From Blepharisma stoltei ATCC 30299 (lineage: Eukaryota > Protista > Ciliophora), in NCBI GenBank assembly GCA_965603825.1, contig CBFDEM010000011.1, positions 1,116,001 to 1,180,000 on the forward strand: DNA of 64,000 bases, written 5' to 3'. Positions 42,368-64,000 of the stretch are shown here, piece after piece. How positions within the stretch are numbered: the stretch's first letter is position 1; the number at the start of each line of letters is the position of its first letter. The translations under genes were made by a program, and so were the position numbers. The notes beneath the pieces are model-generated. The model saw only the letters and a list, made by a program, of their open reading frames with translations. It ran no database searches and was not told the DNA's origin.

Positions 42368-45300
42368 TTAATGGCTGAAAATGTATTTCAAAGGCGGGAG
42401 CTTCATATGAGTCCTATCTTCTGCTGAGACTGCATATAAGATAAGACAAACTGAAGTTTTTCCATCTGTTTTGTCTTCACTAATTTCTCTATATAGCTCA
42501 TAAACTTCTTTCTTGAATATTTCATCTTTATTACCTGCCATATATTTATTAAACAGACATTTAGTACCACAACCAATCTGTATCGCCAAAATCTTGTATT
42601 TTTCTTTTAAGTTCTCAATTAATTCTTCTATCGTGCAAGGCCCATCCACTACAATTTCATCCCATTTAGTAAAGCCATCATTATATGCTTTCTTAGGAGC
42701 TGCCAAAGTTTCATCATAATCTACAGATTTAATCATTATTGCAGGCTGAGGTTCGAGAAAAGAAAAATAAGAAATGGCCAAGTTCATAAAGCAATCCCTC
42801 ATTTTCTCTATTTCAAGCCCAAGAGTATATTTAATAAACTCAGCGACCACAATTCCAGCAATAACTGCAGTGGTTGTTGCGAGGGCTGGATTATTTTTCC
42901 AGCGATTACCTTGGTTTGGTGCCTTTCTATAGTAGAAATTCGGTAGTTATTTGCCCTCAAACTTGAAGCATTGTGGATAAAATCGATATGAAAATTGCTG
43001 TCATCATCTTTTTCAAAGGAAATTGGGGTCATAGGCTTGATATTTTCTAGTGAAAATCCTTTGAGCCAGCTTATTAGTTCTTCTTTTAATTTAATTTCAG
43101 CTTCTGATGCAGGCCGCTGCTCTTCATTATCATCTATTTTAATTTTTCTTGGGATAAATTCCTTAACCTGGACTTTAGACGCAATTTCTTTTATGTAATT
43201 TCTGTCTCTATTCTGAGGGATATTAAGGTTAAAGGCTAGCAAATTTGCATAGGATTCTATAAAGTCTATATGATTTTCTTTTTCTGTGTCAAAAATACAA
43301 GGCTCAGGCAGCCTCCTGGTCCCTGTCCAAAGATCTTTACCATGCTTGTCTTTTGTGCCGGGCGGACATTGATGTAGTAAAGACCTTATTTCTTCATAAA
43401 AAAGCTCATTAAACTTATGTCTTGCTATTATAATACAATCATCAAAGCTGCTTATCCCAGAAAGTTCTAAAAATTCTTTTAGCAGCTTTAACTGGGCCAT
43501 CTGCATATCAAAATGCCCAATACTTCCCAATTTTTGTAAATAAGCCTCTGGGTTTTCTAAATATTTATTCAACTCATCAGGGCCAGAGGTAAAGAAATCT
43601 GACAATTTTTCTCTTGACCAATCAATACAATGAGAAATTTCATATGGATAATGCTTCAAAGTGCATGATTTAGCTTTCGTTTCTGTTGGCTGTGGGGTAT
43701 CTTCATAGCTTTGGGTCAGATATGGAATGATTGCTTGGGAGTTTGCTTTTGTCCCTTCTGTTCCGCTTTCAAAAAGTGGCTTTTTGTAATAAACACATTT
43801 TCGGTCAATAAAAATTCGTGCACTGGCATTATCAACAGCCCCAAAAACTGCATTTAATTTCTCCCAAAACCTATCATTAAACAAGTTTTCTGTTTCTGGG
43901 CAAGCTCTGTTTTTCAAAGCAGTGACATTTATTTCTGGGTTCATGATTTTCGCTATCCTTGTAGCACATTCACTTTTGGATTGACCTACATTGGTAATAT
44001 TGAATAAAAACTGCCTTGTCAGGTTTGAGATTTCTACATTATCGTCGTCAGTGACTGTAAGCTCTCCAGTCCCACAGCAAACTCCGGATAATGCAAAAAG
44101 CTTTAAAAATTCGCAGCCTAAAGCACCAGATCCGACCATAAATAAATTGGCTGATTTAAGCTTGTTTAGTCCTTCTTCTCCTATAATTGCTTGGAGATCG
44201 TGATATCTTGAGTCAGAAATACTTGCAGATGGCTGAATTAGCTCAAACCAGTCCATATGTAGCCACTGCTGGATTGGGGTAAATTTTCCTGTGAATTTTA
44301 TGACTTCTTGAGCTGCAATTCCGCCAAATATTGATGTGATTGGAGAAATTTGTAGCCTTGCGTATTTTGAGACGTTTTTAATGACAGATTCATCAATTGT
44401 TTCTAATGAAAAGTCTTCTGAGGCTTCATTAATTTCTCTTGCATAAGCCACACAAAGATTTGCGTGGTCCTCATTATGGATTTCAGGAAGAAATCCGTGG
44501 ATTTCTTGGAATTTTCTGATAGCAAGCATGGCTAAATGTAAATTGGCAGGTCTGTTTTCTTTTAAGTAATCAACATGCATAAAAGGCTTTAATCCTTCAG
44601 GATTTTTAATAGAAATTTCATAAGGCCGGAAATCATAATGGAAAGGTTTTCTTACTTCTTCAACTGTCCCATATTTTATATAATCAGGGTAATCTGTGGT
44701 ATCTTCATCTATAGAAAAGCTGTGCGGGTCAATATAAGTGACCTTTCGTTCTCTGCCATCATTAAGAGGAGTCATTCCTTCGACTTCTTTGAACTTTATG
44801 TAGTCTCCGTCCTGAAACCAATGCTTGTCCTCATCATTTAGCTTCACAACTCCAGGATTGCTTCTGCTTATATTTCCAACCAAGTACGTTCTTAAGGCTG
44901 ATCCATTTTTGTCAGAAATTTCAAAATTATCCCCAAAATCTACAAAAACGTGCCCAGCTGTCCCCCATGTTTCGACAGACACAAATCCAACCTGTGGGCT
45001 TAAGTCTCGGCAAATGGAGTTAACCCTTATAAGTGTGGCACTATCACTTTCAGTGAGAAGGACTAAAGAGTGTTGAGAAATGACTTCTCGAGTAATTTCT
45101 CCTCTGTGGATATTTACTGAGACATTTGGGTTGAGCGCTTGAAGCTTGGAGATGACTGATTCAGCTCGATTTTGGCTGACATGGGATTCATTTATGAAAA
45201 AATTGGTCCCTAAATCGGAGAGAGAAATTATAGCATCATCATGCAAAGTGACTGTATGGAGGCCAGCTAATATTAAGTTTTTAGCGACTTCAAGACCAAC

Positions 45301-45405
45301 CCCACGGAGTCCAGAAACTAAAACGCGTAAGGTGAAAAGCTTTTTTTGAGTAGCCATACCGATGGCAGCAATAGAGCGTGAATAGAGATTATCTTGATTT
45401 GACAT
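42368..45405 (-). CDS. UBA1-type ubiquitin-like activating enzyme E1-A (about 1012 aa; 1-nt frameshift near 42888)
   Basis: LYSR, GLRGVGLEVAKN, GSGALGCE, DDDNVEISNLTRQFLF, catalytic KSCTLKHYP (Cys codon 43663-43665), FEKDDD..HIDFI; restoring one C gives GKIIPALATTTA, joining the UFD ORF 42368..42850. Confidence 0.92.
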
Positions 45406-45889
45406 TTATTAATAAATTGTAGAATCACTTAAATATGAATAAAAAGTTTGAAAAAATGCAGAGTACTTAAGCTATGTAATGAAAGTCAGCTTGTGAGAAG
45501 TTTGCATAAAGGAAATAAGATAAGTAGAGACTCTGAAATCTCTTCTGTCATAATTTAGAAATGATCTTGGCTAATGCTTAGTTGGATTAATATCAAGATG
45601 AAAGCTCCATACGATTAGGCCTAAAGAATAGTATTAAATTATGATTTAAGCAATTAAGCAAAAGAAATTTGATTTTTGACATTGGCTCCACATGCTTAAA
45701 ACTTCTCACGTGTGGAGTCGGCTCATAATTTCATGAAACGCAAACTGGTCAGCAAGCGGGGAAGTAGCTTTAATTTCTTTTCAATAAATGCTTAATTATA
45801 TTTACCGAAAACTCTATTATAATTTCTGAAGGACTGCTTAAGTCCTTGACATGCCTTAATTCATAAATTTATTTTATTTATTTTTCCTT

Positions 45890-46330
45890 TTATCCCATAG
45901 CATACTGCTGAGTCCACTCTCTTGCCCTTTGGTTATATAAGTCCATGTTTTGAGCGCACAATGTATTAATTTCAGTTGAGAACCCGTTTGGACTAGGGTT
46001 ATACAATAGTGCTATCACATAAGAGATTACAGTTCTTACAGTGACTTTTGGCTTCCATCCAGAATTAAAGATTTCGCAGCAAATACGGCCATCAGAAGGA
46101 TGTACGTTCGGGTGGAAAATTTTCGTTTTGAAATAGAAGGTCGGAGGGCTCGCAGGGAAATTTGAAGGGAAAGTTATTTCGAACTTGAACATACCACCTT
46201 CATAGGGGCTCTCATCAGGACCGTTTAGAGTTCCTCTCCAGTGAAATAGTGATTGATCTACTAAATTTACAGTGATGCAAGGCTCAGGTATTTCTAGAAG
46301 ATTGTTAAATTCATTCGTGAGTCGCTCCAT
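45890..46330 (-). CDS. Divergent UBC-fold conjugating enzyme E2-1
   Basis: W..GP.ESPYEGG.F, FHPNV..DGRICCEIF. Confidence 0.95.
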   Translation of the reverse strand: MERLTNEFNNLLEIPEPCITVNLVDQSLFHWRGTLNGPDESPYEGGMFKFEITFPSNFPASPPTFYFKTKIFHPNVHPSDGRICCEIFNSGWKPKVTVRTVISYVIALLYNPSPNGFSTEINTLCAQNMDLYNQRAREWTQQYAMG

Positions 46331-46969
46331 TTTATTTCTATAAATTTAAAATGGTAATTGATTTTAGGTTTTTATAAATTTTGATTAAAGATTGAATAAT
46401 ATGAACTTAATAGTTTCAAAATTTATTTTGACTTGGACAAAAAGTAATCAATAAATTTGAATTGTTTAATTATAAATTATTAAAAATAATTATCAAAAAT
46501 ATTTGAAAATTAATTATTTCTTTAGCTCTGTTCTCACTTATATTATTGGTTTTAAAATCTCTATCTTGGCATAAAATATATGAATAGCTCAAAACTAAAG
46601 CTTCAGTATTTAATTTTTGATTAATTAATTTAGAGAGTTACTTTTTTAAAGCTAATTAATCATTATACATATAGTAATATTTTACCTATTAGTATAATAA
46701 ACTCGCACATGAACTAATAATAAAAATTAAATAAGCCAATATCTAATAAAATGATTATTTATTTAATAAATTTTACATGCTGCAAATTCCAACAAATTTA
46801 ATTAGTTGTGTTTAGAATCTTAACTATTTATTTAATCTCAGTTTCATATTTGAAATTCGTTATTTTTGCAAGTTTTGCCAATGAAAGTCTTCAATAATTT
46901 TCTCTCTACAATTTTTTTATAATAGATTAAATGCTCTCTATACTTATTTTATATTATAATAACCAGATC

Positions 46970-47404
46970 TTATTTAGCAAAATCAGCCGTATATCGCTTT
47001 GCCTCTCTTTCATAAGCTGATACATTGGCTCTCATAGTATTGCATGCATCATTAACGTATCCTTGCTCAGGGCACGGCTCAGCTAGTAAATGGCAAATAG
47101 CACAAAGGACAGCTCTCATTGATATTCCAGGTCTCCAAGCAACGCTTAATATTTCGGAGCATACTTTACCCTCAGAATTCACATTTGGATGATAAATCCT
47201 TGTACGGAAGAAAAACTCAGGGGGAGATACTGGGAAATTGGAAGGGAAAATTATATCAAAGCGGAAGTTTCCACCTTCAAAAGGAGTTTCTGGAGGACCA
47301 ATTAATAGACCATTCCAGTGCAGCATGTCTTGACCTAGGTTAATTTCGATTCCTTTGATAGGATTTTCCATGAGTTTATTGAATTCTTGTAATATTCTAT
47401 CCAT
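46970..47404 (-). CDS. Divergent UBC-fold conjugating enzyme E2-2
   Basis: GPPETPFEGG.F, YHPNVNSEGKVCSEIL. Confidence 0.95.
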   Translation of the reverse strand: MDRILQEFNKLMENPIKGIEINLGQDMLHWNGLLIGPPETPFEGGNFRFDIIFPSNFPVSPPEFFFRTRIYHPNVNSEGKVCSEILSVAWRPGISMRAVLCAICHLLAEPCPEQGYVNDACNTMRANVSAYEREAKRYTADFAK

Positions 47405-47868
47405 TTTATTATATCAATTATTTTTGATTCTATAAATTTTGTAAATTTTTGTTCTATTTATGAATTTAATCAAAGAAGAAATCTTTGTGATGTAAAAATA
47501 TGAATATTTCTCTTTCGGAATTATTATCAAGATAATTTCCAAGTAATTATAATAAAAGCATTTTTAATCATAGGAAACTGTTTTTAATTTTATGTAAGAG
47601 TTTTGACTAGTAGAAATAAGGGCTGAAATAAAAGTAAGGAAAAATCCATGATGAAAATTAAGTGTTCAAGCTAAAATTAAAATATTTAAGCTTTTATAAG
47701 AGACGCTAAGTGTCTTCTATTTACTTTTGGAAGGTAATAAGAAATTAAAATTTTATAGTAAATTATTATAATAATAAATTAAATGAATTTTAGAAAAATT
47801 AATGCACCATATTTTACCAAATACATTTATAGAATCTTGGAATGAATTGAAATTTATAATAAATATAA

Positions 47869-50142
47869 ATGCCTACAAGAAAAGGCTCACTTTCATGAGC
47901 TTCAAAGGCAGCTATTTCTATTATTGAATGCAATAAAGATCGACTATGTATCGATCCAAATTCGCCAATAGGCAAATTATTAGCAGATTTTGAATCAAGC
48001 TTGGAGTTTTTACCATTTAGGGAAGAAAAATTCGTAGTTAATATTCTTGAATATATTTCTAAAAATTACGATCCAAAATACTTCGAAACAGTTCAAGATT
48101 CCAATATCAACGTAAAATATCTTAAAAAAAAAGATGAAGAAACTTACTTTTTTGAACAAATAAAAGCTAAAGAAGCACCTTTAGTTTTACTTAAAAGGCA
48201 TAGTGAGGATAAACCATATGCTTATTTTGAAAGAAACAATGGAACTGTTTATTTATTAACAGCGCTTTTTACTCAAAACGTGTTGAAAAGATTATATTGC
48301 AATTTCGGAAACCAATGGAAAAATCTCAGTGAAAACCCAGATGATAAAACACCAATAAAATTCAGAGAAGAAACTGTATACATTTATACAAAAATCAATA
48401 AAGAAGATCTTGATAAAGAAAAGGTCGATAAAATTCTTCCGTCCGAATGAGAAGGACATATAAAAGAAAACCTGCGAGAGTCTATAACAATATATTCCGT
48501 TAGCACAAATCAAAACCAGGCTGGGATAAAAATACCAAAAGATATTGAAGCTCAGCAGGAGTTAAAGCAAAAAATCCAAAATAAAAATGATGAAATACAA
48601 AATTATAAAGATCAATTAGAGAAATCAAAAATTGAAAATGAGAAATTAAAAGAAACCATAAAAAGTTTAAGTGGCGAAAAAGAAAAAAATATCGAAATTC
48701 GTCAAGGGCTAATAAATGAAAATGAGAAATTAAGAGATCTCATAGAAAATTTAAATGTGAAAATAAACGAAAAAAATGCTGATATCAGTAAAGAATTGCA
48801 AAAAAGTAATTCAGCCCAACAAGAATTAAGCAAAAATATCCAAAATAAAGAGCAGATGATAGAATATTATAAAAATCAATTATCATGTTTGGAAAATGCA
48901 AACGAAAAATTGCAAAAAGAGCTAAAAATAATAAATGATGAATTAAAAGAAAAAAACATCAAAATTGATTCGCAAAATCAAGAAATTCTAAATAGAGACG
49001 ATATAATTAAAAACTATAAAGAACAATTTGAGGAACTTACAAACGAAAGAAATAAATATCAAAAAGAAATAAAAGAACTGAAAATTGAACTTCAAAAAGC
49101 AGTAGATGAAAATATAAATTTGTCTGCAATTAATGCAATTCTACAGAAAGAAGCTGAAACCGAAGCTCAATCATTAATCCAAGTAAAAGAAATTTATAAA
49201 ACTCAAAACGAAGCCTTAGTTCAAGAAAGGGAAAATCTTCAGCCTCAATTAAAAGCATTAAGTGAAGAAACTAAAGAATTCAAATCAATAAGCCTGCCTC
49301 CTAGGATTATAAGACGTCCAATAATTTATGACGGGAAAAAATCAGGGATTCCTAATATAGGGAATACCTGCTATCTTAATTCACTTCTTCAATTGCTTGC
49401 GAGCAACAATGAATTTTACGATAAAATCCAGCCTATCGAACATGAATTATTTTCTTCGTTATCCTCACTATTAAAGAGCATCAGAAATCCTGGATCCTAT
49501 AATAATACCGATCAACTTGTTAGGTCCTTTAAATACCAACTTGGTGCAGAATTCCCAATGGTAACCTTTATATAGCTTGGAAATTCATCTCAGCAAGATT
49601 CTAAAGAAGTAATGGTGATGCTGACAGGCATACTATCAGAATTAACTAATATAGACTCTATTTTTACAACTATCTATAAACAAATATTTAAATGCCATGC
49701 TTGTGGAAACAAAGCTAATAGGGATGATACAAATATTTTTATTACAGTTCCCAGGGGTAAATCTCGCTCTATACAAGAATTTTTACCAATTTTAAAACAG
49801 CCAAAATATTACACCGGAAGTAACCAATTATTTTGCGAGAATTGTCAAAATATGCAAAATATCACGATGGAGTGTGAAGAAATAATTTGGCCATCTACAG
49901 TTACCTTTTACCTGCCCTCGAATAATGGGAGTACTAAGATTAATGAAGAATTAAATATTGAAGGAACTACTTATAGATGGTATGGATTAATATGCCATTA
50001 TGGAAATTCACAATTTGGACATTATAAAGCATATACGTGGGATACCAAGAATTGGACTGAATATAATGATTTCAGTGCAAAAATTGATAAAGTCGATGTG
50101 GCAAATGGCTATCTAGCCTTTTATGCAAGGGCTGAGAGTTAA
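47869..50142 (+). CDS. USP (peptidase C19) deubiquitinase USP-1 (752 aa): N-terminal domain, coiled coil, catalytic domain
   Basis: ATG 47869; UGA=Trp read-through; GIPNIGNTCYLNSLLQ; intron 49561-49575 (GTAACCTTTATATAG) then QQDSKE; HYGNSQFGHYKAY..WTEYND. Confidence 0.9.
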
Positions 50143-50537
50143 TAAGAATAATAATTCTTAATTAAAATTATCATAAATATAAATTTAAGAATCTTAATTT
50201 ATTTATTATTATTTACATAGATCAATTCATTTTAATTACATGACTTCTTGAAAAGCCTATAAAATAATTTTTTAAGCAATATTTATTCAGTCTCGATCCT
50301 AATTTTTTAAGCAGCTAATTATTTGTTAAAAATATAAATTGCTAATAATAGATTATCTCTAATAAAAGTTGCATTTACATTTATCTTTTATATATTTCTA
50401 TTAATAAGTTTTAAGACTTAGAGTTATTTAATTTAATCTTTAATTTAATTATAATAAGTTTAAAATATAACTAAATTTTATTATTATATGGCGATTACAG
50501 GCTTTTTGTCCGAAAAGAGCTTAATTATTATTTTAAT

Positions 50538-51720
50538 TTAAAGTGTAAGCGCTCCACCATTTTTGGCTAGGTCATCAAAATTAGTTCTTAACCAAACTGA
50601 ATTGCTAGGAAAAATGCATCTGAATATTTTGATACTCTAGGCGTATTGCCAGTACAGTCATAGCAAACCTCGTTGCCTGGAACTTTACTTGAAATATATC
50701 GATGCGCAAAATTATCGAGTATTGACCAAATAAATTTTAATTCTTAATTTCAGCTTTTGTGGAAATAACAAGAACATCTTTCTTTGATTTTTTCAATTAA
50801 TTTTTCAATTCACAACTTTCTATTGTATTACTAATAAAATCTAATTTTATTTTTACAAATGCTTCTAGTACTTCTACGTTCCTGGTAACTTTGAATATTC
50901 AATTAATTATCAAAATAATCATTAAAATGGAAGTTTGGCCTATTTTAAGAGTTCAATAAATATATAGTGTAAGACACTCAGTTTATTAGCTATTTTGGGA
51001 ATTAAATTATAAAGAGATTGCTTGAGGTGTTTCATTTTAAAGACTTGATAAGATAAATATAAATATTATGAAACCATTAAAAAAGGGTTAAATAACTTAA
51101 CTTGAATTATCTTCAATCCCATTCTAAACGCATTTTTCGTAATTTCATGCAACCCTCTATCCAGTAATAGTGTACTTTTGGATCCAGATAAGCATGCATG
51201 TTGGCGTTAATGGCTGCTATCATCAAGCAGGCCTTCTTCAAATAAGAAATTCTCATATTTTTATTACTATCTACAAATTCAAGAATTTAATGCTTAACTG
51301 AATCGCTAAAAGCATTTGCTGATGGTATTTAAGAACAATAAAACAGAATTTCGGTCATATATCAAAAATTAAAGTGCTCAAGGAAATACGATAAATAAAA
51401 ATTAATTTTTTGATTTCATGAGGGTCATACTTTATGCATCTTAAATTTTACAGAGTAATATTAATTAGCAACAATTTAAGAATTTTAGAAAAAATAGTCA
51501 AAACTTCTTTTAGCTCAAACATGATTATTAAAAGAACCGAGATTAAATATTCGTCCCATGTATCTCCGCCACTTGCTTGCGAATAAGCCTCCACGGTGTT
51601 GAACATCTTAGACAGAGCTTGGAGTTTGAGATGATGGACCATAATGCAGAATCAATAGCCTAGCTCGAATATTTATGAAGCTAGGCCCTCCATAAGGGCC
51701 GAAAAGCAGCCTGGCTTCAA
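50538..51720 (-). pseudogene. Decayed gene of unknown family, possible degenerate C-terminal RING-like motif
   Basis: Protein-like reading blocks broken by stops and shifts; near the 3' end EVCYDCTGNTP..KIFRCIF..SVWL. Boundaries approximate. Confidence 0.35.
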
Positions 51721-51878
51721 AATCATTAATTGGGATATTTTATCTTTGTATTTATTAAAATTAGTTCTCGTGCAAAAATTTGCTGTCCTTTTGTCATTTT
51801 AACATATCTTTTTGCTATAAATTCATATAAAAAGTTTGCCATTTCTAATTTTTAAAGCCATGCTTCTATAAAACTTAA

Positions 51879-52160
51879 AAATTATTAATAATTTTAAAGA
51901 ATGAGTAACAGGGTGTTAGCAGAGCAATAGAAGTCTATAAAAATTGGAAATATTCATTATTATCAGAAAAAATAGCTGATATTTGTAATGTACCTCAAGA
52001 ACAGCAGATGATTACTTTCGAAACGAGAACATTGAGTTTAGCACAGCATAGAGACAAAACCTTAGGTGAATTGGGAATGCAAAATAATAAGATAGTCAAT
52101 GTTATGCATAGGTTCATTGGAGGCAAAAAGAAAAGTTTGGATATTATTTGAATTAATTAA
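51879..52160 (+). pseudogene. Ubiquitin-like modifier UBL-C (disrupted 5' end), GG + 11-aa extension
   Basis: Frame 51909-52160 QGVSRAIEVYKNWKYSLLSEKIADICNVPQEQQMITFETRTLSLAQHRDKTLGELGMQNNKIVNVMHRFIGG-KKKSLDIIWIN*; in-frame TAA 51906-51908 and no in-frame start ATG. Confidence 0.7.
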
Positions 52161-52421
52161 AAATATTTCCTCAATAAATTGTATGCACTTTTTATCAATT
52201 GTTTGACGAAAACTAATTGTTGCTTCTTTAAAAAAGATCAAACTTTGCCCGCCCTAATTTATATCAGATCTATTGAAGCTCTAATTCTTAATTTAATAAT
52301 TCAGCTTTTGAAACCCTGTTTTTGGTTATTTCTTATCCATTTTAAATTATCAACAGCTGAATTAATTTTTAACAAAATTCTACAATTTAGGACCTAAATT
52401 TTAGAACTCTATAATTATTAA

Positions 52422-52687
52422 ATGTCAACCTGGACGATAAGAATTGAAGATAAGGAAGGAAATTCACGCTCAATGCAAGTAAATAGCTCTTGAACTTATG
52501 CTCAACTCCACGGAGAGCTTTTAAATTGCTTCAGAATCGAAATGCAACTCCAACTGTGATTTATAATAATAATACTGGGGACAAGTATTTGAATTTGGAG
52601 AGATCAGGTGGACGCACTTTGGAACAGCTGGGCTTTCGGAATAGCTGCTTAGTTAAACTTCTTGAGAAAATGAGAGGAGGAAATTAA
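52422..52687 (+). CDS. Ubiquitin-like modifier UBL-A precursor (about 88 aa, ends MRGG-N; 1-nt deletion at 52523-52525)
   Basis: MSTWTIRIEDKEGNSRSMQVNSSWTYAQLHGELL/KLLQNRNATPTVIYNNNTGDKYLNLERSGGRTLEQLGFRNSCLVKLLEKMRGGN; AAA here versus AAAA in paralogue UBL-B. Confidence 0.8.
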
Positions 52688-53143
52688 GCTAATTTATATT
52701 TATAAGTGTGAGTTTTAATATAAAATTAAAGTTATCATTGATTTTTTATCAAAATTGCATTTTTAAAGCATATAAAGGACTAGACACATGCGCTCTCGAG
52801 TTTATTATGCAGGATAATTAATTAGTTAAAAAAATGAATAGAATTCATCACTTCAGTTTTGACGATAATGCTCTATTTTGACAAAATTTAGTCTTTTTAG
52901 ATTTTTATAAATTTATAAAAAGTCTTGCAATTATGCTTACCTCCAAGCAAAATTGTTGTTTCTCTAAAAAAGATCAAACTTTGTCTATCCCAAATCAATT
53001 AAATCTCTAGTTCTCTATATTAATACCTTGCTTTTAAAACCCTGCTTTCATTTATTTATTATCCATTTTATCTATTAGCAGCTCAATTAATTTTTAAAAT
53101 TCTACAATTTTAAACAAAGATTTTAGTATTTTATAATTATTAA

Positions 53144-53398
53144 ATGCCTACCTTGACTATAAGAGTTGAAGATATGGAAGGAAATGTACGCATACAGCAA
53201 GTAGATAGCTCTTGAACTTATGCTCGACTTCACGAAGAGCTTTTAAAATTGTTTGAGAATCCAAACTCAACACCGACTGTGATTTGCAATAGTAAGTATA
53301 TGAACTTGGCGATATCAGGTGGACGTACTTTGGAAGAGCTGCGCTTTGAAAACAACTGTTCACTCCAACTTCTTGAGAAAATGAAAGGGGGAAATTAA
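53144..53398 (+). CDS. Ubiquitin-like modifier UBL-B precursor (84 aa, ends MKGG-N), intact
   Basis: With UGA=Trp: MPTLTIRVEDMEGNVRIQQVDSSWTYARLHEELLKLFENPNSTPTVICNSKYMNLAISGGRTLEELRFENNCSLQLLEKMKGGN*; beta-grasp pattern, GRTL motif, di-Gly. Confidence 0.88.
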
Positions 53399-53879
53399 GC
53401 TAATTTATATTTAAAATTATGAGTTTTTACATAAAATTAAAGCATCTCGAAAATGGGCTTAGTATTGAATTTTCATTAAAAATTGCATTTTTATAAAGGA
53501 ATAGGTAATATGCATTCTCGAGTTTATTAGAATTAAATATTAAAAAATAAATAGAATTCATCACTTCAGTTATTGACGAAAATTATCTATGTTGCCAAAT
53601 TTAATTTCTCTAGATTTTTATAAATTTATAATATCCTAGACTTGACTTTCTATGTAATAAATTCTCCTTACCTTTCCTTAAAAACATCAAATTTATAAAT
53701 AGATTTTACCACTCATATAGCACAAATTCATGCTGCAGGCTTAGAATACTTTTATTAGTATAAATTTTCAAGAAATATATCTTATCAGTGCAAAGGGTAA
53801 GATAATAAATCCAAAGCGTCATGTTCCTTAAAAAATCAAAATTTTAAATAGACAAAAGTTGGCTTTGGTATATATAAAC

Positions 53880-54640
53880 TTTGCGAGCCTTTTTAGCTTT
53901 ATATAGATCAATCCTGGATATTTATCATCTGTGGCCCTTTTGGATATCTCAGCTAAGCCAATATATATTGATTTGATCACACCTGATGAATCAAATTGGA
54001 TTAATTAAGCTAAAAAATAGGAATTTACAGACTATTCTCATTTATGATCACAAATCAGATTAAAAAGATAATGATTAATTTTAAGAATAACATTGGTAGA
54101 ATTAGAAGCCAGAGATCATCGTATTATTGAACTATTATAAATTATATATAACTTATTCACTTTTATAGGTCGGCCTTATTAAAAATGCAAATACTCTAAT
54201 GAAATTCACATCTTTTGCATCCTAAGATTAAAATATTATTTTATCAAATTAATTTTGATAGATTTTAATGAGTTTTCATTTTGGTTGAGAAATGGCTAGA
54301 AAGGAAGGTTTTCAATAATAAAATAATTAAGGAAATTCGCGAATAATGCATATCTATAGATAATCCATCAGCTATTCTTTAGAAACACATATAAAGCATG
54401 AATCGCTAAAATATGTTTCAATTAATAGACTTTTCTGGACATAGCATATGATTAATAGTATCTCATATTCAAGCAATTTACAATTAGTCTGGGGAAGAGC
54501 TCTATCTCCCTGAAGCTTCTTACACTGAGTTTTTTTGCTTATATCTTTTTATAATTAACTATCTCCAAAAAAAAGTTTAGCCTCTTCTGAAATTTGATCC
54601 CCCAGGAGTGAAGGATATATAAACAAATCTAAATACCATT
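53880..54640 (+). pseudogene. Decayed gene of unknown family (resembles 63012 ORF)
   Basis: YLSSVALLDISAKPIYIDL..N*AKK*EFTDYSHLWSQIRLKR*W with in-frame TAA/TAG; later block GEELYLPEASYTEFF. Boundaries approximate. Confidence 0.4.
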
Positions 54641-54928
54641 TAGTCATATTAATATATGAATAATTATAATTTTTGCGTATGCATTTCAGCAAAATTAAGC
54701 TTTCTCAAATATATTTGTTTCATTATATCAACCTTAAGTTCGCAAAACCTGACCATATAATTAATTTTACTAACTTGGAATTGAAAATTTGTCCATAAGT
54801 TGCAACCAGCATTTGAAGGTTCAGCAGATAAATGGCTTTAGACAAACCTTTAGTAATTACACTTTAAAGATTAAATAAAGCACAATTAAATTAAAAAATA
54901 TATGCAGCTGAAAGAAAAATAAAGATAA

Positions 54929-55921
54929 TTATATAGAATTACCTAATTTTAAATAAAAAAGTATATAAGCATGATTATAGTCAGGAGGATCTTCTGTCAC
55001 AAAAGCGTCATTAAACTTATACCATTTTCCATTATCACAAGTATAAGCAATATAGTGGCCACATTGCCCGCCTCCATAATAGCATATTAAAGCATATAGT
55101 CTATAGTCACTTTCCTGGAAATTTATTTCTGTCTCAAGTTTTCTATTCTTATTCGAAGTATCAGTAACATAAAATACCAAAATTTCTGGCATTTCTAAAG
55201 AATCTACTGCGATTGTAGAGCTGGTTATTTCCTGACAAACTTCGCATTGCAAATTTAATTTATCTTTTTTGCTTTTTATGTTTTCTAAACATATTTTTGC
55301 ATTTTATTTATCCTTTGGAGCTATAATAAAAAATAATGATTTATCTGATTTTATAACTTTATGGCCTTTCTGGCATGTAAAAGTTTGGTTTTTTGTGATC
55401 TGAAATCTTTTTTCCTCATGGCTAAATTCTTGTATATATATATCTATTAGAATATTATAAAGCTCTTTACAGTCGTTCTGGGCATTAAGTTCGTACTAAA
55501 TATTGTTTACCGTAGGAAATTTTTCTTTAAGTGTATTTAAAAAATTTATAATGCCTGGTTTAAAATCACTTGATGAGATACGGGAAAGCATAAGGTAAAA
55601 AATTATTAATAAATTTCTGAATAAAATGGTGTTAGATTTCGATATGAAATCTACAAAATTTGGAGTGCTTGCTAGAACTTGGAGTACAGAATTTAAATAG
55701 CAGGTATTTCCATAGTTAGGAATTCCACTCTTTCTAGAGCATTGATTTCCAAAAGACAAATTTTCTAGCTCTTGATAATCTCTAGAGTCCTTTAGCTTTT
55801 TGTTTTGTTTATTTTTACGATTTCTCAATCATGCTACTAGTTTTGGGAAAAAATAAATAATAACTAATATTGCAACTATATATCCTCCTCTTTTAGCAAA
55901 ATACTTAATATCATAGCTCAT
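54929..55921 (-). CDS. USP deubiquitinase USP-2 with N-terminal TM anchor (325 aa)
   Basis: MSYDIKYFAKRGGYIVAILVIIYFFPKLVA-W(UGA)-LRNRK; GIPNYGNTCYLNSVLQ; intron 55496-55510 then AQNDCKE; GGGQCGHYIAY..WYKFND. Confidence 0.9.
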
Positions 55922-56292
55922 TTAATTTTCATAGAAATTTAGCTTAAATTAAATATTAAACATAAAACTCAGAAAGCAAACATATCTGCGCTTTAGGAAA
56001 TTTAGAGTCCAAATTTAATAAATTAAACTCAAATTTTTTATACCTTGTAAAAGTTTTCAATACTTTATGTATTGGCTAAGAAAGCCTAAACATATCAATA
56101 TATAAATGTAATTATTAAATCCAAATTATGAGAAACTAGAATTACTTGATGAGATTAACAATTATAACATTTGAAATTCTAGAGCTGAGAGAAGCTGCAG
56201 TAGCAAGCACCCCAATATTGGACTCCAATAGTGTGAGCATTCATATAAGTTAAAAAAACACTTTGAAATCAGACTACTTTCAGAGGCTTCTT

Positions 56293-56440
56293 AAAGAGAA
56301 TGATTGTAAAGAACTATTTATTATCATTATAAATTTATGTATGGAAAATTACCAAAGTGATATGCTTATAATAAACAAAAAACAAGCAATATTCTGTGAA
56401 AATGGTAACAGGTAGAATTATCTGAATCTCAATTATTTTA
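56293..56440 (+). pseudogene. USP catalytic-domain fragment (copy of USP-3 region)
   Basis: KENDCKELFIIIINLCMENYQSDMLIINKKQAIFCENGNR* versus USP-3 KENSCEELYTIIINIFMEFCHSEMFLINKNQAIICENNHR. Confidence 0.8.
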
Positions 56441-56873
56441 GATAATAAAATATATATAGAAGAATAGCTAGATAAGCTTTGAGTGCAAAATTATCAGATT
56501 CAAAGATATAGTCAGAATCAGTGTCTTGCATGCTCTTTCCCGATATTTCAATGTAAAATTTACCTAAAAGTTGGGTGTAAAATCAGCTAATTTTTGATAA
56601 TTTATAAATCATTCCATTAATATAGATATAATCGAAATATAGAAATTCAATTGATAAATAAATATTCTTAAAAATCCACCTTAATGCATATGTGTAATAT
56701 TTTTCTATTGTTTTGATAATTAAGCTCAATTCTTTATTATAGAGAATTAAACCTAAATGCAAAATAATAACCTTTGTTTAATAATCTGATAAGCTATGTT
56801 TATATAAAATCTTACGATTTCATATCTCCAGCAGCAAATAATTAAAATGTCTATTATAATTCTATAAATTTAT

Positions 56874-58939
56874 ATGTCAGAAGAGCTTAAAAAAGCAGTT
56901 TATATTCTTGCAACGATCAATCAGCATATAAAATTTCCTTTCAAAAATCCATGTTTAAGCAAAATTTTTCAAAATGCTTTTACCTCAGGCATTGATAATG
57001 AAGATCTTAGACTACTTGAAAAATACACATTGCCATTGCCAAGCTTTGATAGCGCATATCATATTGTAAAGGATATCATTAGATTCCAGAAATGAGAAGA
57101 TATTTTTGCTTGGCCGAACAAATTATTGCAACCATTTCAAGTATCTGACATACCTAAAAAAATTCAAAAAGTTGCATTTTTTTGCGTTTGCACTAATAAG
57201 GATTATATAGAGGAAATAGAAGGCTACAACTTAATTGTAAAACTTGTTCTACCTGAAGGGATTTTACAATGTAAATACTGAGAAGAATGAAAGAGCTGCT
57301 CATCTTCTCAGGAAATGGACAAAAATAGTAAGCCTAAAATCTATTCCGCAATTTTTGGCTTTGTTAAAAACTGAGGAGTGATTCCAAAAAATGAAGAAAC
57401 GGCAGAGAATGAAATAGAAAAAGTGGAAGATGAAGAAGCAAGAATAGAAAAAATTGAAGATAACCCTCAATATTTTGAAGAAAATGATACTAAAAATATA
57501 AATGCGGACCAAATAAATGAAAAATTCAAACAAATAGAAGAGCTATCTAAATGCAAACAAAGCAATGAAAGCAATGAAAGCCTCCAAGCTGAGCTAATAA
57601 GAGTAAAAATTGAAAATAAAAAAGCGTGCAATGATATAAGTGAAATAAAAGCAATGATAGAGGACGTGAGAAATTCTTTGAATGAAAAAATAGATGAGAC
57701 TAACATAAATTTAAAAAAAGTTTAAATTATTTAAAAGAAGGACTAGATAAAGATCAATTATTTATGGAAAATGTCCTTGAAAATTGCCAAAGTAATTTAA
57801 ATCAACTTAAGTATTACAGAAATAGCTCAAATTATGCACCAAAAAATAAAAATCGCGATTTTTCTTTAAATTTTAATGTTGTTTCTGATAATTTTCAATG
57901 CATCAATCAAACTGTTCAAGATTATATCCAAAAATTCAATCAACTGGAAATTAAATGCAATTCATTAGTAGATATATGCAATAAAATGATAATTGAGAAT
58001 GATAGCAAAGATTCATCATTAAAGGCGAAAATTGATGAAATTGAAGAAAAGATCAAGAAAGTTTCAATATCAAATGGAAATGAATTAATTTCAAGCCCAA
58101 AAAATGCTCCTGACTTAAAAATTATAAATAACAACACTCCAAAAAGGAAAAAAAGGGGGTTAACCAATATAGGGAATAGTTGCTATCTGAATTCAGTTTT
58201 ACAGATCTTTGCAAGTGTTCAAAATTTCGTAGAAAATATAAGAAACATTGAGAATGACTTATTTTATTGCTTAGGTGATGTACTATCGTCGATAACAGAT
58301 CCCTACTCTATAAAAATAGACGAAAAATTAAGAAAACTAAGAAAATTGGTTACTAGCGAATATCCTATGGTAATTTATATATAGTTTGATGGAAATAAAG
58401 AAAATAGTTGCGAAGAATTATATACTATCATAATAAATATATTTATGGAATTTTGCCATAGTGAAATGTTTTTAATAAACAAAAATCAAGCGATAATTTG
58501 TGAAAATAACCACAGGTCAGAATTACCTGAGCATCAACTATTTTTAACTATACCCGATAATGAATTGTCATTTGTAGAATGGCTAAATCAGCTTGAAAAT
58601 GAGAAAAAATTATTTAGTGGAGATAATAATTTATTCTGTGAAACTTGTGGACAGAGATCTGACTCAGAGATTGTGACAGAAAGAATTGAGACTCATGAAA
58701 TTTTAGCTTTTTATAATGGCAAAAGTAAAAATTTGATTGAAAATGCTCCTAATTCTGTTTCTTTAGGGGAAAATCAGTATGAAATATTCGGAATAATTGT
58801 GTACAGTGGAAGACACTACATAGCTTATACAAAAGAAGAGGGAATTTGAAATGAGTATAATGATAATGAAGTCACAGCAAATAAGCATCCAAATCCAAAT
58901 AATAGCTATATGCTGTTTTATAAAAAAACTTACAATTAA
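56874..58939 (+). CDS. USP deubiquitinase USP-3 (about 683 aa; 1-nt deletion in A-run 57713-57719)
   Basis: UGA=Trp joins ORFs; GLTNIGNSCYLNSVLQ; intron 58370-58384 (GTAATTTATATATAG); YSGRHYIAY..I-W-NEYND..YMLFYKK. Confidence 0.85.
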
Positions 58940-59083
58940 TTAGTTTTTCATTTATCAAATTTTTAATAAATTATATTTATTTAATTTAAACTATCACTAC
59001 AAAATTTATAGTAAATAATTTTTCATCGTCAAAAATCATAAATTATTATGATTTACTTTCCATAATAATTATTTTAGAATAAA

Positions 59084-59521
59084 TTAAACTGCATAAGTCT
59101 GCGTCCACATCCTAGCTACATTTTCATATGCTTCTTTATCAGCATTTCTGATTGTCGTGGCATCATTAAGGTATCCATCCTCAGTGCTAGGTTCACTCAT
59201 GAGTACACAAATACTGTCAATGATCGACTCTACTGTTGTTGCACTTTGCCACTTGTAATTTAATAGCATCGTACAAGCTTTGCCATTCGAGTCCACGTTT
59301 GGGTGGAAAATAATCGTTTTGAAGTAAAATTCTGGAGGACTTTGAGGGAAGTCTCGAGGGAAAAGAATCTCGAATTGGAATCTTCCACCTTCAAAAGGAG
59401 TTTCTGGAGGTCCTATTAGTATCCCACCTCAGTGATAGAAATCATTGTCGATTAAATGGACTGATAATCCGTCGGTTGGGTCTTCACAGATCTTTGCGAA
59501 ATCAGCCTGGAGCTTTTGCAT
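59084..59521 (-). CDS. Divergent UBC-fold conjugating enzyme E2-3 (145 aa)
   Basis: MQKLQADFAKICED..FYH-W(UGA)-GGILIGPPETPFEGGRF..FHPNVDSNGKACTMLL; the UGA aligns to the conserved Trp of E2-1/E2-2. Confidence 0.93.
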
Positions 59522-59846
59522 ATATGTAGAATTATAAATAATGAATTTCTTTATTAGGGATATAAAGAAATGAAAAAGTTTAAAATAAATGAATTAGGAA
59601 ATACATACTGTGTTTTCAAGTCTTCATTTTTATATAATAGAGTCTCAATGTCTTTTAATAGGTATTTTTCTATGAATTCTAACAATTTGGCGAATTAGGC
59701 TCAAAGTCCCTTAATTTTTTAGACTCAGGAATTTTGCCTAATTTGATTTTTCCATAAACTCGTTCTTATTATATCTCCCTGCTCATATTTTCATCTTTAT
59801 GCACACTTTTAACTGAGAATTAAGGATTCTACATTTTCTGTTAATA

Positions 59847-62800
59847 ATGTCAAGTCAAGATCATCTCTATTCGCGCTCAATCGCTGCTATTGGGATGGCG
59901 ACTCAAAAAAAGCTTTTCACCATGCGAGTCTTGATTTCTGGTCTCCGAGGAGTCGGTCTGGAAATCGCTAAAAACTTGATCTTAGCTGGCCTCAACACAG
60001 TAACTTTACATGATGATTCTGTAATTTCGCTCTATGACTTAGGGACCAATTTCTACATAAATGAGTCTCATATAAACCAAAATCGAGCTGAATCAGTCGT
60101 CTCCAAGCTCCAAGAGCTCAACCCAAATGTCTCAGTTAGCATCTACAAAGGAGAAATTACCCAAGAAGTTATTTCTCAACACTCATTGGTGATTCTTACA
60201 GAAAGTGACAGCACCACGCTCAGAAGGGTGAATTCCATTTGTAGAGAGCTAAATCCTCAGGTAGGCTTTATATCTGTTGAAGCCTGAGGAGTGACTGGAC
60301 ATATTTTTGTAGATTTTGGGGATAGTTTCGAAGTTTCTGATAGAAAATGGACAGACTTGAAGAGCTATATTATTACCAATATAAGCAAAAGCAATCCTGG
60401 AGTTATAATGATAGAGTTGAGGCAAAGACAAATACTTCAGACTGGAGACTATGTAAGGTTCAAAGATGTCGAAGGAATGACTCCTCTTAATGATGGCAGA
60501 GAAAGAAAGGTCACTTATATAGGCCGGGACAGCTTTTCAATAGATGAAGACACCACAGAATACCCAGATTATATAAAATATGGAATAGTTGAAGAGGTCA
60601 GAAAACCTTTCCATTATGATTTTCGGCCTTATGAAGTCTCTATAAAAAATCCTGAAGAATTAAAGCCTTTCATACAGTCTGATCACTCAAAAGAAAACAG
60701 GCCTTCCCATCTGCATTTAGCTATGCTCGCAATCAGAAAATTCCAAGAAGTTCATGGATTTCTCCCTGAAGTCCACAATGAAGACCACGCAAACCTCTGT
60801 GTGACTTATGCAAGGGAAATCATTGAGGCTGCTTCACAAGAGATTTTTATAGATGCAGTTGACGATACCATCATTAAAAGCGTCGCAAAATATGCAAGAC
60901 TGCAAATTCCTCCAGTTACTTCTATATTTGGAGGAATTGCAGCTCAAGAAGTCATTAAATTCACAGGGAAATTTACTCCAATCCAGCAGTGGTTACATAT
61001 GGACTGGCTTGAGCTGATTCAGCCAACTGCAAGCATTGTTGACTCAAGATATCATGATCTCCAAGCAATAATAGGAGAAGAAGGACTAAACAAGCTTAAA
61101 TCAGTCAATTTATTTATGGTCGGGTCTGGAGCCTTGGGCTGTGAATTGTTACAGCTTTTTGCATTATCTGGAATTTGCTGTGGGGATGGAGAACTTACTG
61201 TCACTGATGACAATAATGTAAAAGTCTCCGATTTGACAAGGCAGTTTTTATTCAACTTGACTAATGTGGGGCAATCCAAAAGTGAATGTGCTACAAGGAT
61301 AGCGAAAATCATGAACCCAGAAATGAATGTCACTGCTTTGAAAAGCAGAGCTTGCCCAGAAACAGAAAACTTGTTTAACGATAGGTTTTGGGAGAAATTA
61401 AATGCAGTTTTTGGGGCTGTGGATAATATAGCTGCACGAATTTATATTGACCAAAAATGTGTTTGGTATAAAAAGCCTCTCTTTGAAAGTGGAACAAAAG
61501 GGACAAAAGCGAAATCTCAAGTAATCATTCCATTTTTAACCCAAACATATTCAGATATCCCATGGAAGCATGAAAAGAAAATCTTAACGGATAATCTATA
61601 TTTTCCATATGCAATTTCTCACTGTATCGAGTGGTCTCGAGAAAAATTGTTAGATTACTTTACTTCTGGTCCTGGAGAGCTAAATAAGTACTTGGAAAAC
61701 CCTGAGGCTTATATGCAAAAACTACGAAGCATGAACAATGCTGGAACACAAGTTGTCCAGCTAAAACAACTTAAAAAATATTTAGAGCTTTCTAAAATAA
61801 GTAGCTTTGATGATTGTATTGCTACCGCAAGACATAAGTTTAATAAGCTGTTTAATGAAAAAATTAGAACCTTATTACATCAATTTCCCCCTGGTAGTGA
61901 TTTTTGGTCAAGGACTAGGAGATTGCCTGAGCCTTGCATTTTTGACACAGAAAAAGAAAATCATATAGGCTTCATAGAAGCTTATGCGAATTTGGTAGCC
62001 TTTAACCTTAACATCCCACAGAATAGAGACAGGAATTACATAAAAGAAGTAGCGTCTAAGGTCCAAGTTAGGGAGTTTGCCCCAAAAAAAGCCTATATGA
62101 AATTAGACGATAATGAGGGCCAGCAGCCAATCGAAAAATCTGACATAGAATTAAGAGAAGAATTGCTGAGTTGGGTCGAAGAATTTTCATTAGAAAATGT
62201 CAAGCCAATGACACCAATTGCATTTGAAAAAGATGATGATACTAATTTCCATATTGATTTTATCCACAATGCTTCAAGTTTGAAGGCGAATAATTTCAAA
62301 ATTTCTACAATAGAAAGACACCAAACCAAGGTTAGTGCTGGAAGAATCATCCCAGCTCTGGCTACAACAACTGCAGTTATTGCTGGAATTGAGGTAATTG
62401 AATTTATTAAATATACTATTGGGCTAGAATTAAAAAAAATGAGGGATTGCTTTATGAATTTGGCAAGCCCGCTTATCCTTTTTCCAGAGCCTCAGCCTGC
62501 AATAGTGATTAAATCTGTTGAATATGATGAAGTTTTTGCTGCTCCCAAGAGGGCATATAATGATGGCTTTACCAAATGGGATAATATTGTTATTGATGGG
62601 CCTTGCACAATGGGAGAGCTAATCGGCACTTTGAAAGAAAAATACAAGGTTTCACCATTACAGATCGCCTGTGGAAAGTTCTGCTTGTTTAATCACTATT
62701 CAAGAGATAATAAAGATGAGCTGCTTAGAAGAGAAGTTTATGAGCTATATAAAGAAATTAGTGGAGACAAAACAGGGGGTAAAAAGTCGATTGGTCTCAT

Positions 62801-62873
62801 GTTATATGCAGTCTCAGTTGAAGATAAAGCTCTAATGATGTTTCCACATTTGAAGTATATTTTCAGTCATTAG
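59847..62873 (+). CDS. UBA1-type E1-B (1008 aa), lacks the canonical catalytic Cys
   Basis: UGA 60285-60287 aligns to Trp of E1-A VETWG; closely similar to E1-A throughout; KILTDNLYFP replaces KAKSCTLKHYP. Confidence 0.92.
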
Positions 62874-63011: not shown

Positions 63012-63314
63012 ATGAAAATTCCTGAGGACCAGAAATACTGAGATTTATGTGCTTCAATTTGCTTGATTAATACTATAGTAGAATATCTTTATATTGATGA
63101 TGCAGGCCAAATTAGCAATTTAATGCAAATAGAGCAAGCTCTAAAAGATTCTCAAAAGTTTAACTTGAAAGAAGATTCAATAAAACAGCTGTGAGATCAG
63201 GCTAAAATGAAAAAGATATGATTTGAAACTGGCTCAACATTATTTTGAATGATAGTGATCTATGAAATTTGCTTTTTTATCAAGAACAAAATAAAACTTA
63301 GATTTCTTTGGTAA
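63012..63314 (+). CDS. Hypothetical 100-aa ORF next to the telomere (gene or fragment)
   Basis: Open only with four UGA=Trp: MKIPEDQKYWDLCASICLINTIVEYLYIDD..KQLWDQAKMKKIWFETG.. Confidence 0.4.
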
Positions 63315-63500
63315 GCTATTATAAGTTATGCCTAGGGCAAAATATTGAAAATAAGTTATTCCTATAAAAATGATGTTATATAATTATTATAATAACGACT
63401 TATTAAGATCAAATTTTATTTTAAATCTGCATTTTTTGGAGTAGTTCAATACGGTCTTGGTCTAATGCGTCGCTAATGAAATTGATTTCTTTTTTAGAAA

Positions 63501-64000
63501 GGGTGTAGTTAGGGTGTTAGGGTGGTTAGGGTGTTAGGGTGTTAGGGTGTTAGGGTGTTAGGGTGTTAGGGTGTTAGGGTGTTAGGGTGTTAGGGTGTTA
63601 GGGGTTAGGGTGTTAGGGCTGTTAGGGGTTAGGGTGTTAGGGGTGTTAGGTGTTAGGGTGTTAGGGTGTTAGGGTGTTAGGGTGTTAGGTGTTAGGGTGT
63701 TAGGGTGTAGGGTTAGGGTGTTAGGGGTGTTAGGGTGTTAGGGTGTTAGGTGTTAGGGTGTAGGGTGTTAGGGTGTTAGGGTGTTAGGGTGTTAGGGGTG
63801 GTGTTAGGGTGTTAGGGTGTTAGGGTGTTAGGGTGTTAGGGTTAGTGTTAGGGTGTTAGGGTGTTAGGGTGTTAGGGTGTTAGGGTGTTAGGGTGTTAGG
63901 GTGTTAGGGTGTTAGGGTGTAGGGTGTTAGGGTGTTAGGGTGTTAGGGTGTTAGGGTGTGTTAGGGTGTTAGGGTGTTAGGGTGTTAGGGTGTTAGGGTG
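63501..64000 (+). repeat. Telomere (TGTTAGGG)n, i.e. CCCTAACA repeat
   Basis: About 500 nt of an 8-nt repeat at the window end, with sporadic indels. Confidence 0.98.

What the first reader, a model, noticed from the sequence alone, without database searches (positions are those of the whole stretch)
42368..62873. Operon-like cluster encoding a complete, private ubiquitin-like conjugation system (E1, E2, UBL, USP)
Seen: every intact recognisable gene across 20.5 kb is a UBL-pathway component. The order is E1-A(-), E2-1(-), E2-2(-), USP-1(+), UBL-C/A/B(+), USP-2(-), USP fragment, USP-3(+), E2-3(-), E1-B(+), with the two E1s at the ends pointing outward. All are far more divergent than housekeeping ubiquitin, UBA1 or UBC4. 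Known: eukaryotic UBL pathways are normally scattered, while clustering of modifier, E1, E2 and protease is typical of archaeal ubiquitin operons and bacterial anti-phage Bil systems. Inference: a lineage-specific orthogonal modifier pathway under rapid birth-and-death evolution, possibly immune-like (ISG15-analogous) or developmental. I do not know of a description of such a cluster in ciliates.
Basis: partly seen in the sequence, partly recalled or inferred. Interest (0 to 1): 0.97.

Follow-up and report, generated by a model that had tools for sequence, protein, structure and literature searches.

The report
Ciliate's clustered private ubiquitin-like tagging kit
The ciliate Blepharisma keeps, side by side in its genome, an altered spare set of protein-tagging genes (own ubiquitin-like tags, activator, carriers and erasers) that looks like a separate tagging pathway; this copy is partly broken, and rumen ciliates appear to have built a similar gene kit independently.

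Summary
The cluster is real: two UBA1-type E1s, three UBC4-derived E2s, three small ubiquitin-fold genes with Gly-Gly at or near the C-terminus, and USP proteases, at the end of a Blepharisma stoltei contig. It is not complete here. E1-B lacks the catalytic cysteine. E1-A, UBL-A and USP-3 each miss one base in a homopolymer (error or recent loss), USP-2 has an internal stop and UBL-C is disrupted. An intact, larger kit lies on contigs C15/C35, and 7 of 9 loci of this UBL family sit beside the same compact USPs. The E1s are long-branch duplicates of heterotrich UBA1 and have lost the Asp that binds ubiquitin Arg42/Arg72; the canonical UBA1 is elsewhere. Four metagenome contigs with rumen-ciliate telomeres carry E1+E2+UBL+USP on one molecule; a common origin of the two E1 sets is rejected (AU p=0.002). 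Best reading: a lineage-specific UBL conjugation pathway under birth-and-death evolution (about 0.7), most likely defensive (about 0.4). I found no paper describing it. The scan noted this system before on other DNA of this genome (s1-646627, s1-624630, s1-629521, s1-646626).

The parts
42368..45405 (-). E1-A: UBA1-type monomeric E1 (IAD, FCCH, 4HB, AAD, SCCH, UFD). Catalytic Cys (SCTLK) and ATP motifs intact; crossover-loop Asp591 equivalent is Gln. One base missing at 42888-42889 shifts the frame before the UFD
   Evidence: dN/dS 0.16 before and 0.19 after the break versus the C15 E1
45890..46330 (-). E2-1, UBC4/5-derived E2, 146 aa, intact, HPN and catalytic Cys present; lacks UbcH5 F62 and SPA loop
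46970..47404 (-). E2-2, 144 aa, intact, catalytic Cys present
47869..50142 (+). USP-1: long N-terminal coiled-coil region plus compact USP domain, 15-nt intron 49561-49575, Cys/His/Asn-Asp motifs intact
51860..52160 (+). UBL-C: ubiquitin-fold gene ending FIGG plus extension; in-frame stops and no clean start, probable pseudogene; 49% identical to intact paralog P0155
52422..52687 (+). UBL-A: paralog of UBL-B ending MRGG-N; one base missing in the A-run at 52523-52525
53144..53398 (+). UBL-B: intact 84-aa beta-grasp modifier ending MKGG-N; Ile44 and Lys48 equivalents kept, Arg42 and Arg72 equivalents lost; UBL-A/B lie in a 725-bp tandem duplication
54929..55921 (-). USP-2: compact USP with N-terminal hydrophobic segment, intron 55496-55510, in-frame TAA at 55304-55306 between Cys and His boxes (pseudogene or error)
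56292..56439 (+). USP remnant, 78% identical to USP-3 exon 2
56874..58939 (+). USP-3: N-terminal extension plus compact USP, intron 58370-58384, catalytic motifs intact; one base missing at about 57710-57719 relative to its C8 paralog
59084..59521 (-). E2-3, intact, head-to-head with E1-B; 88% identical to C15 paralog, dN/dS 0.13
59847..62873 (+). E1-B: full-length 1008-aa UBA1-type ORF with no catalytic Cys (TDNL-YFPY for ECTLKSFPY) and three changes in the adenylation motif; still under purifying selection (branch dN/dS 0.26); probable pseudo-enzyme
63012..63356 (+). 5' stub of a further USP, paralog of the USP that follows the C15 E1
63505..64000 (+). TGTTAGGG (CCCTAACA) telomere repeats; the assemblers appended telomere reads to hand-trimmed contig ends, so this need not be a fixed chromosome end

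Best explanation
The locus is one partly decayed copy of a Blepharisma-lineage ubiquitin-like conjugation pathway spread over about nine loci. Shown by sequence: a duplicate of UBA1 diverged at the residues that read ubiquitin's tail; a family of one- to three-domain beta-grasp proteins ends in Gly-Gly, often followed by a short extension; UBC4-derived E2s and compact USPs expanded beside them. Inferred mechanism: a compact USP trims the extension to expose Gly-Gly; the private E1 (the C15/C35 copy, and E1-A if its frameshift is an assembly error) adenylates the UBL and forms a thioester; the cluster E2s transfer it to target lysines, probably with little or no help from ordinary RING/HECT E3s because the F62 and SPA docking residues are gone; the many USPs remove it. 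Linkage keeps co-adapted E1-E2-UBL-USP sets together. E1-B is a catalytically dead but conserved copy, possibly a decoy or regulator. The most likely use is defence against intracellular invaders (about 0.4); development (about 0.2) or other stress roles remain open.
For: Domain identity; beta-grasp fold of UBL-B, pLDDT 84, TM about 0.77 to ubiquitin; separate canonical UBA1 on C28 and private E1 clade with 100% support on a long stem; D591 to Gln matched by loss of R42/R72 in the UBLs; E2-1's closest paralogs are cluster E2s, ahead of canonical UBC4; UBL, E2 and compact USP co-location genome-wide; intact E1 plus 5 intact E2s, two di-UBLs and many USPs on C15/C35; purifying selection on E1s and E2s, faster change in UBL-A/B (0.55) and USP-3 (0.43-0.79); degenerate duplicates on C15 and C8; the same four-part kit on telomere-capped 7.9-10.3 kb rumen-ciliate-type contigs with an independent E1 origin.
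Against: Both E1s in this window are defective as assembled. The private E1 keeps the Gln576 equivalent and UBL-A/B have Lys at position 72, so cross-talk with ubiquitin or UBA1 is not excluded. The UBL tails vary widely (K, Q, F, R at 72), so one E1 may not serve all. No E3, target or inducing condition was found. No second heterotrich genome with the cluster was found; the nearest Stentor hit is a canonical UBA1 without such neighbours.
Confidence: 0.7

Rival explanations
1. The cluster enzymes still handle ordinary ubiquitin; the island is a dumping ground of fast-evolving ubiquitin-pathway duplicates and the UBLs are passengers, decoys or USP inhibitors rather than conjugated tags.
For: E1s keep the full UBA1 architecture and the Gln576 equivalent; one array (C18) sits beside polyubiquitin; many copies are broken.
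Against: Loss of D591 in the E1s together with R42/R72 in the UBLs; Gly-Gly kept in UBLs only 11-50% identical to each other; a tandem-duplication island does not explain why four unrelated gene families co-locate, nor why the same four recur on single molecules in rumen ciliates.
Confidence: 0.12
2. The pathway exists but serves nuclear development (conjugation, genome editing) or encystment, in the way SUMO does in other ciliates, rather than defence.
For: Ciliates use dedicated modifier pathways in development (PMC10830130 title and abstract); purifying selection on E1 and E2.
Against: Rapid gain and loss, many pseudogenes and diverse tags fit conflict better than a fixed developmental role; the genome paper's main text and SI never mention ubiquitin.
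Confidence: 0.15
3. The linked kit is a selfish or self/non-self module: conjugation is harmful unless the cognate USP is present, which would select for tight linkage.
For: USPs outnumber the other parts; the whole kit stays on one molecule in rumen ciliates whose fragmented genomes average 2.3 kb per chromosome.
Against: No mobility genes or terminal repeats seen; in Blepharisma several loci have USP+UBL with no E1.
Confidence: 0.08
4. The clustering is an assembly artefact of a repetitive contig end.
For: Contig ends were hand-trimmed; C15 and C35 share 23 kb at 99.9% and C35 joins in the middle of a USP gene; homopolymer deletions are dense here.
Against: Window genes are only 40-89% identical to their paralogs, so they are distinct loci; internal clusters exist (C18); the same gene mix recurs in unrelated metagenome assemblies. 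An artefact may explain the frameshifts and the telomere position, not the cluster.
Confidence: 0.03

Closest known systems
ISG15 - UBA7 - UBE2L6 - USP18 pathway of vertebrates
   Same: Extra modifier with a dedicated E1 that arose by duplication of UBA1 (PMC11354881), own E2 and own USP; two-domain UBLs with C-terminal extensions occur on C15/C35.
   Different: Not orthologous: the E1s branch with heterotrich UBA1 and score lower against UBA7 than against Uba1. ISG15 keeps LRLRGG (PMC12355090), these UBLs do not. Window UBLs are single-domain. The vertebrate genes are not clustered (own knowledge).
FAT10 - UBA6 - USE1 pathway
   Same: UBA1-like E1 with a changed residue-72 pocket activating a divergent-tail UBL (PMC9378703).
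   Different: UBA6 keeps the Asp (D616) and still activates ubiquitin; here it is Gln. Separate origin; multi-gene clusters.
Bacterial Bil (BilABCD) anti-phage system
   Same: Modifier, E1, E2 and deconjugase encoded together; conjugation as defence (bioRxiv 2023.09.04.556158).
   Different: Bil uses a JAB protease and a small bacterial E1 (PMC11354881); here a 1000-aa UBA1-type E1 and cysteine USPs of eukaryotic origin, on both strands, not a transcribed operon.
Archaeal ubiquitin operon (Caldiarchaeum, Asgard)
   Same: Physical linkage of modifier, E1, E2 and protease (own knowledge).
   Different: Archaeal operons carry ubiquitin-like tag, small RING protein and JAB/Rpn11; no RING or JAB gene was found here.
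Canonical ubiquitin - UBA1 - UBC4/5 pathway
   Same: Source of the parts; same folds and catalytic motifs.
   Different: Specificity residues changed; genes clustered and turning over; canonical genes sit elsewhere in the genome.

Membership tests
Ubiquitin-like modifier (type I UBL) | beta-grasp fold | tested here: met
   UBL-B model pLDDT 84, Foldseek prob 1.0, TM 0.74-0.80 to ubiquitin, NEDD8, SUMO
Ubiquitin-like modifier (type I UBL) | Gly-Gly at or near the C-terminus | tested here: met
   UBL-A/B end GG-N; kept in paralogs on C8, C9, C12, C15
Ubiquitin-like modifier (type I UBL) | covalent conjugation to targets | not testable with these tools
   needs biochemistry or GG-remnant proteomics
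Ubiquitin proper | near-invariant sequence with R42, R72, LRLRGG | tested here: not met
   22% identity; tail EKMKGG
UBA1-type canonical E1 | ThiF x2, FCCH, 4HB, SCCH, UFD in one chain | tested here: met
   E1-A's UFD lies beyond a 1-nt frameshift
UBA1-type canonical E1 | catalytic Cys in SCCH | tested here: inconclusive
   met in E1-A and the C15 E1; not met in E1-B or the lone C55 E1
UBA1 (ubiquitin-specific) | acidic crossover-loop pocket for Arg72 (yeast Q576, D591) | tested here: not met
   Q576 kept, D591 is Gln (E1-A, C15) or Trp (E1-B); Asp in 105 of 108 E1s with canonical spacing
UBE2D/UBC4-5 E2 | HPN motif and catalytic Cys | tested here: met
UBE2D/UBC4-5 E2 | E3-docking F62 and S94-P95-A96, and D117 (roles from own knowledge) | tested here: not met
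   replaced in all 8 Blepharisma cluster E2s; kept in most viral UBC4-like E2s
USP (peptidase C19) | Cys box, His box, Asn-Asp | tested here: met
   USP-1 and USP-3; USP-2 has them on either side of a stop
ISG15 system | two-domain UBL ending LRLRGG, UBA7 ortholog | tested here: not met
ISG15 system | induced by infection | not testable with these tools
Bil anti-phage system | JAB deubiquitinase and bacterial-type E1 in a four-gene operon | tested here: not met
   USPs and UBA1-type E1
Bil anti-phage system | UBL, E1, E2 and deconjugase linked | tested here: met
Archaeal ubiquitin operon | linked small RING E3 and JAB protease | tested here: not met
   no such ORF in the cluster

The most novel reading that the evidence does not exclude
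Ciliates have at least twice, independently, duplicated UBA1 and assembled a linked, E3-poor E1+E2+UBL+USP cassette that acts as a cell-autonomous immune tagging system, a eukaryotic counterpart in layout to bacterial Bil operons and in logic to ISG15, with conserved dead E1 copies as regulators.
Probability: 0.35. Interest if true: 0.95.

Novelty: new variant of a known kind. Interest (0 to 1): 0.8.

Why it matters
New eukaryotic UBL conjugation pathways are rare, and the known ones are scattered across genomes. A kit that is linked, recently derived from UBA1 and built twice in ciliates makes two questions directly testable: how a new E1-UBL specificity pair arises from ubiquitin's machinery, and whether protists have ISG15-like intracellular immunity. 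The parts are small and could also give an orthogonal tagging tool.

Tried and rejected
Spliced USP models were not sent to any search tool: exons were searched apart by reference, and the joined step was left out of searches (one local script joined exons only to read motifs). E1-A and UBL-A were read through with X at the break. Viral origin: no E1 relative in viral contigs; viral E2s keep UBC4 motifs and do not group with the cluster E2s; the best non-Blepharisma USP hit was from a giant-virus-like contig but weak (27%). Stentor synteny: the nearest Stentor and sludge E1s are canonical UBA1s with unrelated neighbours; other divergent E1s (P0107, P0116, P0119, P0108) have no kit beside them. 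A 15-nt intron that would rescue UBL-C was rejected: it lacks the A at position 10 seen in the three real introns and removes residues kept in the paralog. Common origin with the rumen kits was rejected for the E1s and no UBL similarity was detected; the E2s share an odd G-Y/F motif, so their origin is undecided. Bacterial promoter scan was at chance level. Ten literature searches found no description (among them).
Full report
Source. The window is the last 64 kb of contig C11 of a 41.46-Mb, 64-contig genome. TGA reads as Trp, introns are 15 nt and the end carries CCCTAACA repeats. A paralog of the cluster E1 is annotated as Blepharisma stoltei, and the genome paper gives the same size, code, intron length and telomere (PMC9942806).

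Observation. Pfam confirms UBA1-type domains in both E1s, UQ_con in three E2s, UCH in the USPs and a weak ubiquitin hit in UBL-C. UBL-B has no ubiquitin Pfam hit, but its predicted structure is a beta-grasp (pLDDT 84; TM 0.74-0.80 to ubiquitin, NEDD8 and SUMO). The gaps at 50.2-51.8 kb and 53.4-54.9 kb hold nothing recognisable. Genes upstream of 42 kb are unrelated.

State of the genes. Intact: E2-1, E2-2, E2-3, USP-1, UBL-B and the E1-B reading frame. E1-B has lost the catalytic cysteine through in-frame changes and a 3-nt deletion, and carries D to N, E to K and N to D changes in the adenylation motif. It is still under purifying selection (branch dN/dS 0.26 against 0.13 for its C15 sister), so it looks like a kept pseudo-enzyme or one recently released from selection. 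E1-A keeps all catalytic motifs but misses one base at 42888-42889. UBL-A and USP-3 also miss one base, each in a homopolymer. Selection downstream of the E1-A break (0.19) equals that upstream (0.16), so the lesion is very recent or an assembly error. The assembly is HiFi plus Flye with hand-trimmed ends, and the methods read mention no polishing. USP-2 has an in-frame TAA and UBL-C has stops and no start, which look like real decay.

The wider system. The genome has a canonical UBA1 on C28, 65% identical to Stentor UBA1, and four divergent E1 loci: two here, one on C15/C35 and a lone one on C55 that also lacks the cysteine. The C15/C35 end holds an intact E1 with five intact E2s, two two-domain UBLs with Gly-Gly plus extension, and many compact USPs. 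E2-3, E1-B and the USP stub in the window are an 89%-identical paralog of that end. A profile of the UBLs finds family members on C1, C8, C9, C11, C12, C15/35, C18, C41 and C55. Seven of these nine loci lie within 10 kb of a compact divergent USP, against 0.8% of the genome (p about 1e-11), and 11 of 14 E2s of the cluster type lie within 10 kb of such a UBL. Several loci are at contig ends, but telomeres were appended to trimmed ends, so 'subtelomeric' is not established.

Origin and specificity. The cluster E1s form a 100%-supported clade on a long stem inside the group of heterotrich-type UBA1s. In yeast Uba1, D591 contacts ubiquitin R42 and R72, the main specificity filter (PMC9378703, PMC12355090). 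This position is Gln in E1-A and the C15 E1 and Asp in 105 of 108 comparable E1s. The UBLs lack R42 and have K, Q, F or R at 72. The Q576 equivalent is kept, so orthogonality is inferred, not shown. The E2s are closest to UBE2D among solved structures but lack F62, the SPA loop and D117, with a G-Y/F motif in place of DDPL. From my own knowledge these residues dock RING/HECT E3s and aid lysine attack, which suggests transfer without ordinary E3s or with a dedicated partner. No RING or HECT gene lies in the cluster. Ile44 and Lys48 equivalents are kept in UBL-B, which would allow chains or proteasome recognition (inference).

A second, independent kit. An earlier scan note (s1-646627) said rumen ciliates carry a similar kit, and I tested it. 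A metagenome scan with the C15 E1 returned seven loci. Four (L048, L050, L051, L052; 7.9-10.3 kb, 20-22% GC) carry E1, E2, a Gly-Gly UBL and two to four USPs, in two gene orders. They end in CCCCAAT repeats, at both ends in L048, L051 and L052, the telomere of rumen ciliates, whose fragmented genomes average 2.3 kb per chromosome (bioRxiv 2022.01.05.474053). A fifth AT-rich contig has E2, a small ORF with Gly-Gly near its end, and E1 in a row. Their E1s also have altered crossover loops, but branch with other ciliate E1s; holding them together with the Blepharisma E1s is rejected (AU p=0.002, group named after I had seen the tree), and the UBLs show no detectable similarity. The E2s share the G-Y motif and the loss of F62, and group together against viral E2s with weak support, so their origin is open. 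I did not identify a separate canonical UBA1 in rumen ciliates.

Mechanism. Shown: the parts, their linkage, origin from UBA1 and UBC4, changed specificity residues, purifying selection and turnover. Inferred: USP maturation of the UBL, activation by the private E1, transfer by cluster E2s, removal by the USPs (about 0.7). For purpose I favour defence against intracellular invaders (about 0.4) because of rapid gain and loss, diverse tags and the parallel with ISG15 and Bil (bioRxiv 2023.09.04.556158). Development (about 0.2) and a selfish module are rivals. No direct evidence separates them.

Comparison and novelty. It works like ISG15/UBA7 or FAT10/UBA6 and is laid out like Bil or archaeal operons, but fails the membership tests for each. 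Ten full-text searches found no description in ciliates or of such clusters in eukaryotes; the library lacks most subscription journals. I class it as a new variant of a known kind. The scan has recorded the same system on other contigs of this genome; those notes are not independent evidence. What this window adds is the dead E1-B, the broken state of this copy, and the test of independent origin.

Verdict. Observation partly confirmed; interpretation partly supported; interest 0.8.

Noticed in passing
window 14360-26836 (-): A 4158-codon ORF (TGA=Trp) at 40-47% GC in a 34% GC window: Ser/Thr-rich N-terminal part, long Cys-rich repeats and a coiled-coil tail; no Pfam hit at 1e-3. Looks like a giant surface or receptor protein.
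   Followed up: partly
G000 C55:255872-258763 (L030): A lone fourth E1 of the private clade, very long branch, with no catalytic Cys and a degenerate ATP site; sits among unrelated genes.
   Followed up: partly
G000 C15:667.9-691.2k and C35:754.3-777.7k: The two contig ends are 99.9% identical over 23 kb, and C35 joins in the middle of a USP gene: recent duplication, alternative processing or misjoin.
   Followed up: partly
L039:18679-19375; C55:260557; P0256: Small B-box-like Cys/His zinc-finger starts lie beside the C8 USP array and the C55 E1; P0256 joins a B-box-like start, coiled coil and UBL domains. Possible partner or TRIM-like family.
   Followed up: no
P0272, P0277, P0176 and relatives (L040): A large family of multi-domain UBL proteins ending mostly IGA on about 1-kb AT-rich contigs with rumen-ciliate-type telomere.
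   Followed up: partly
P0107/P0116, P0119/P0043, P0108, P0100/P0109: Several further independent UBA1 paralogs with altered crossover loops in protist sequences; those checked have no kit beside them.
   Followed up: partly
window 51910-51920: An internal telomere-like AGGGTGTTAG lies at the disrupted 5' part of UBL-C; may be chance.
   Followed up: no
window 1696-2292 (-): A 198-aa ORF with a C-terminal SUMO/ubiquitin-like domain, 40 kb from the cluster and not a hit of the cluster UBL profile.
   Followed up: no
window 6890-10699 (+): A 1269-codon multi-EF-hand protein.
   Followed up: no
L037 (ENA metagenome): The best non-Blepharisma hit of the compact USP is on a giant-virus-like contig with Rpb5, Rpb6 and TBP genes (27% identity).
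   Followed up: partly
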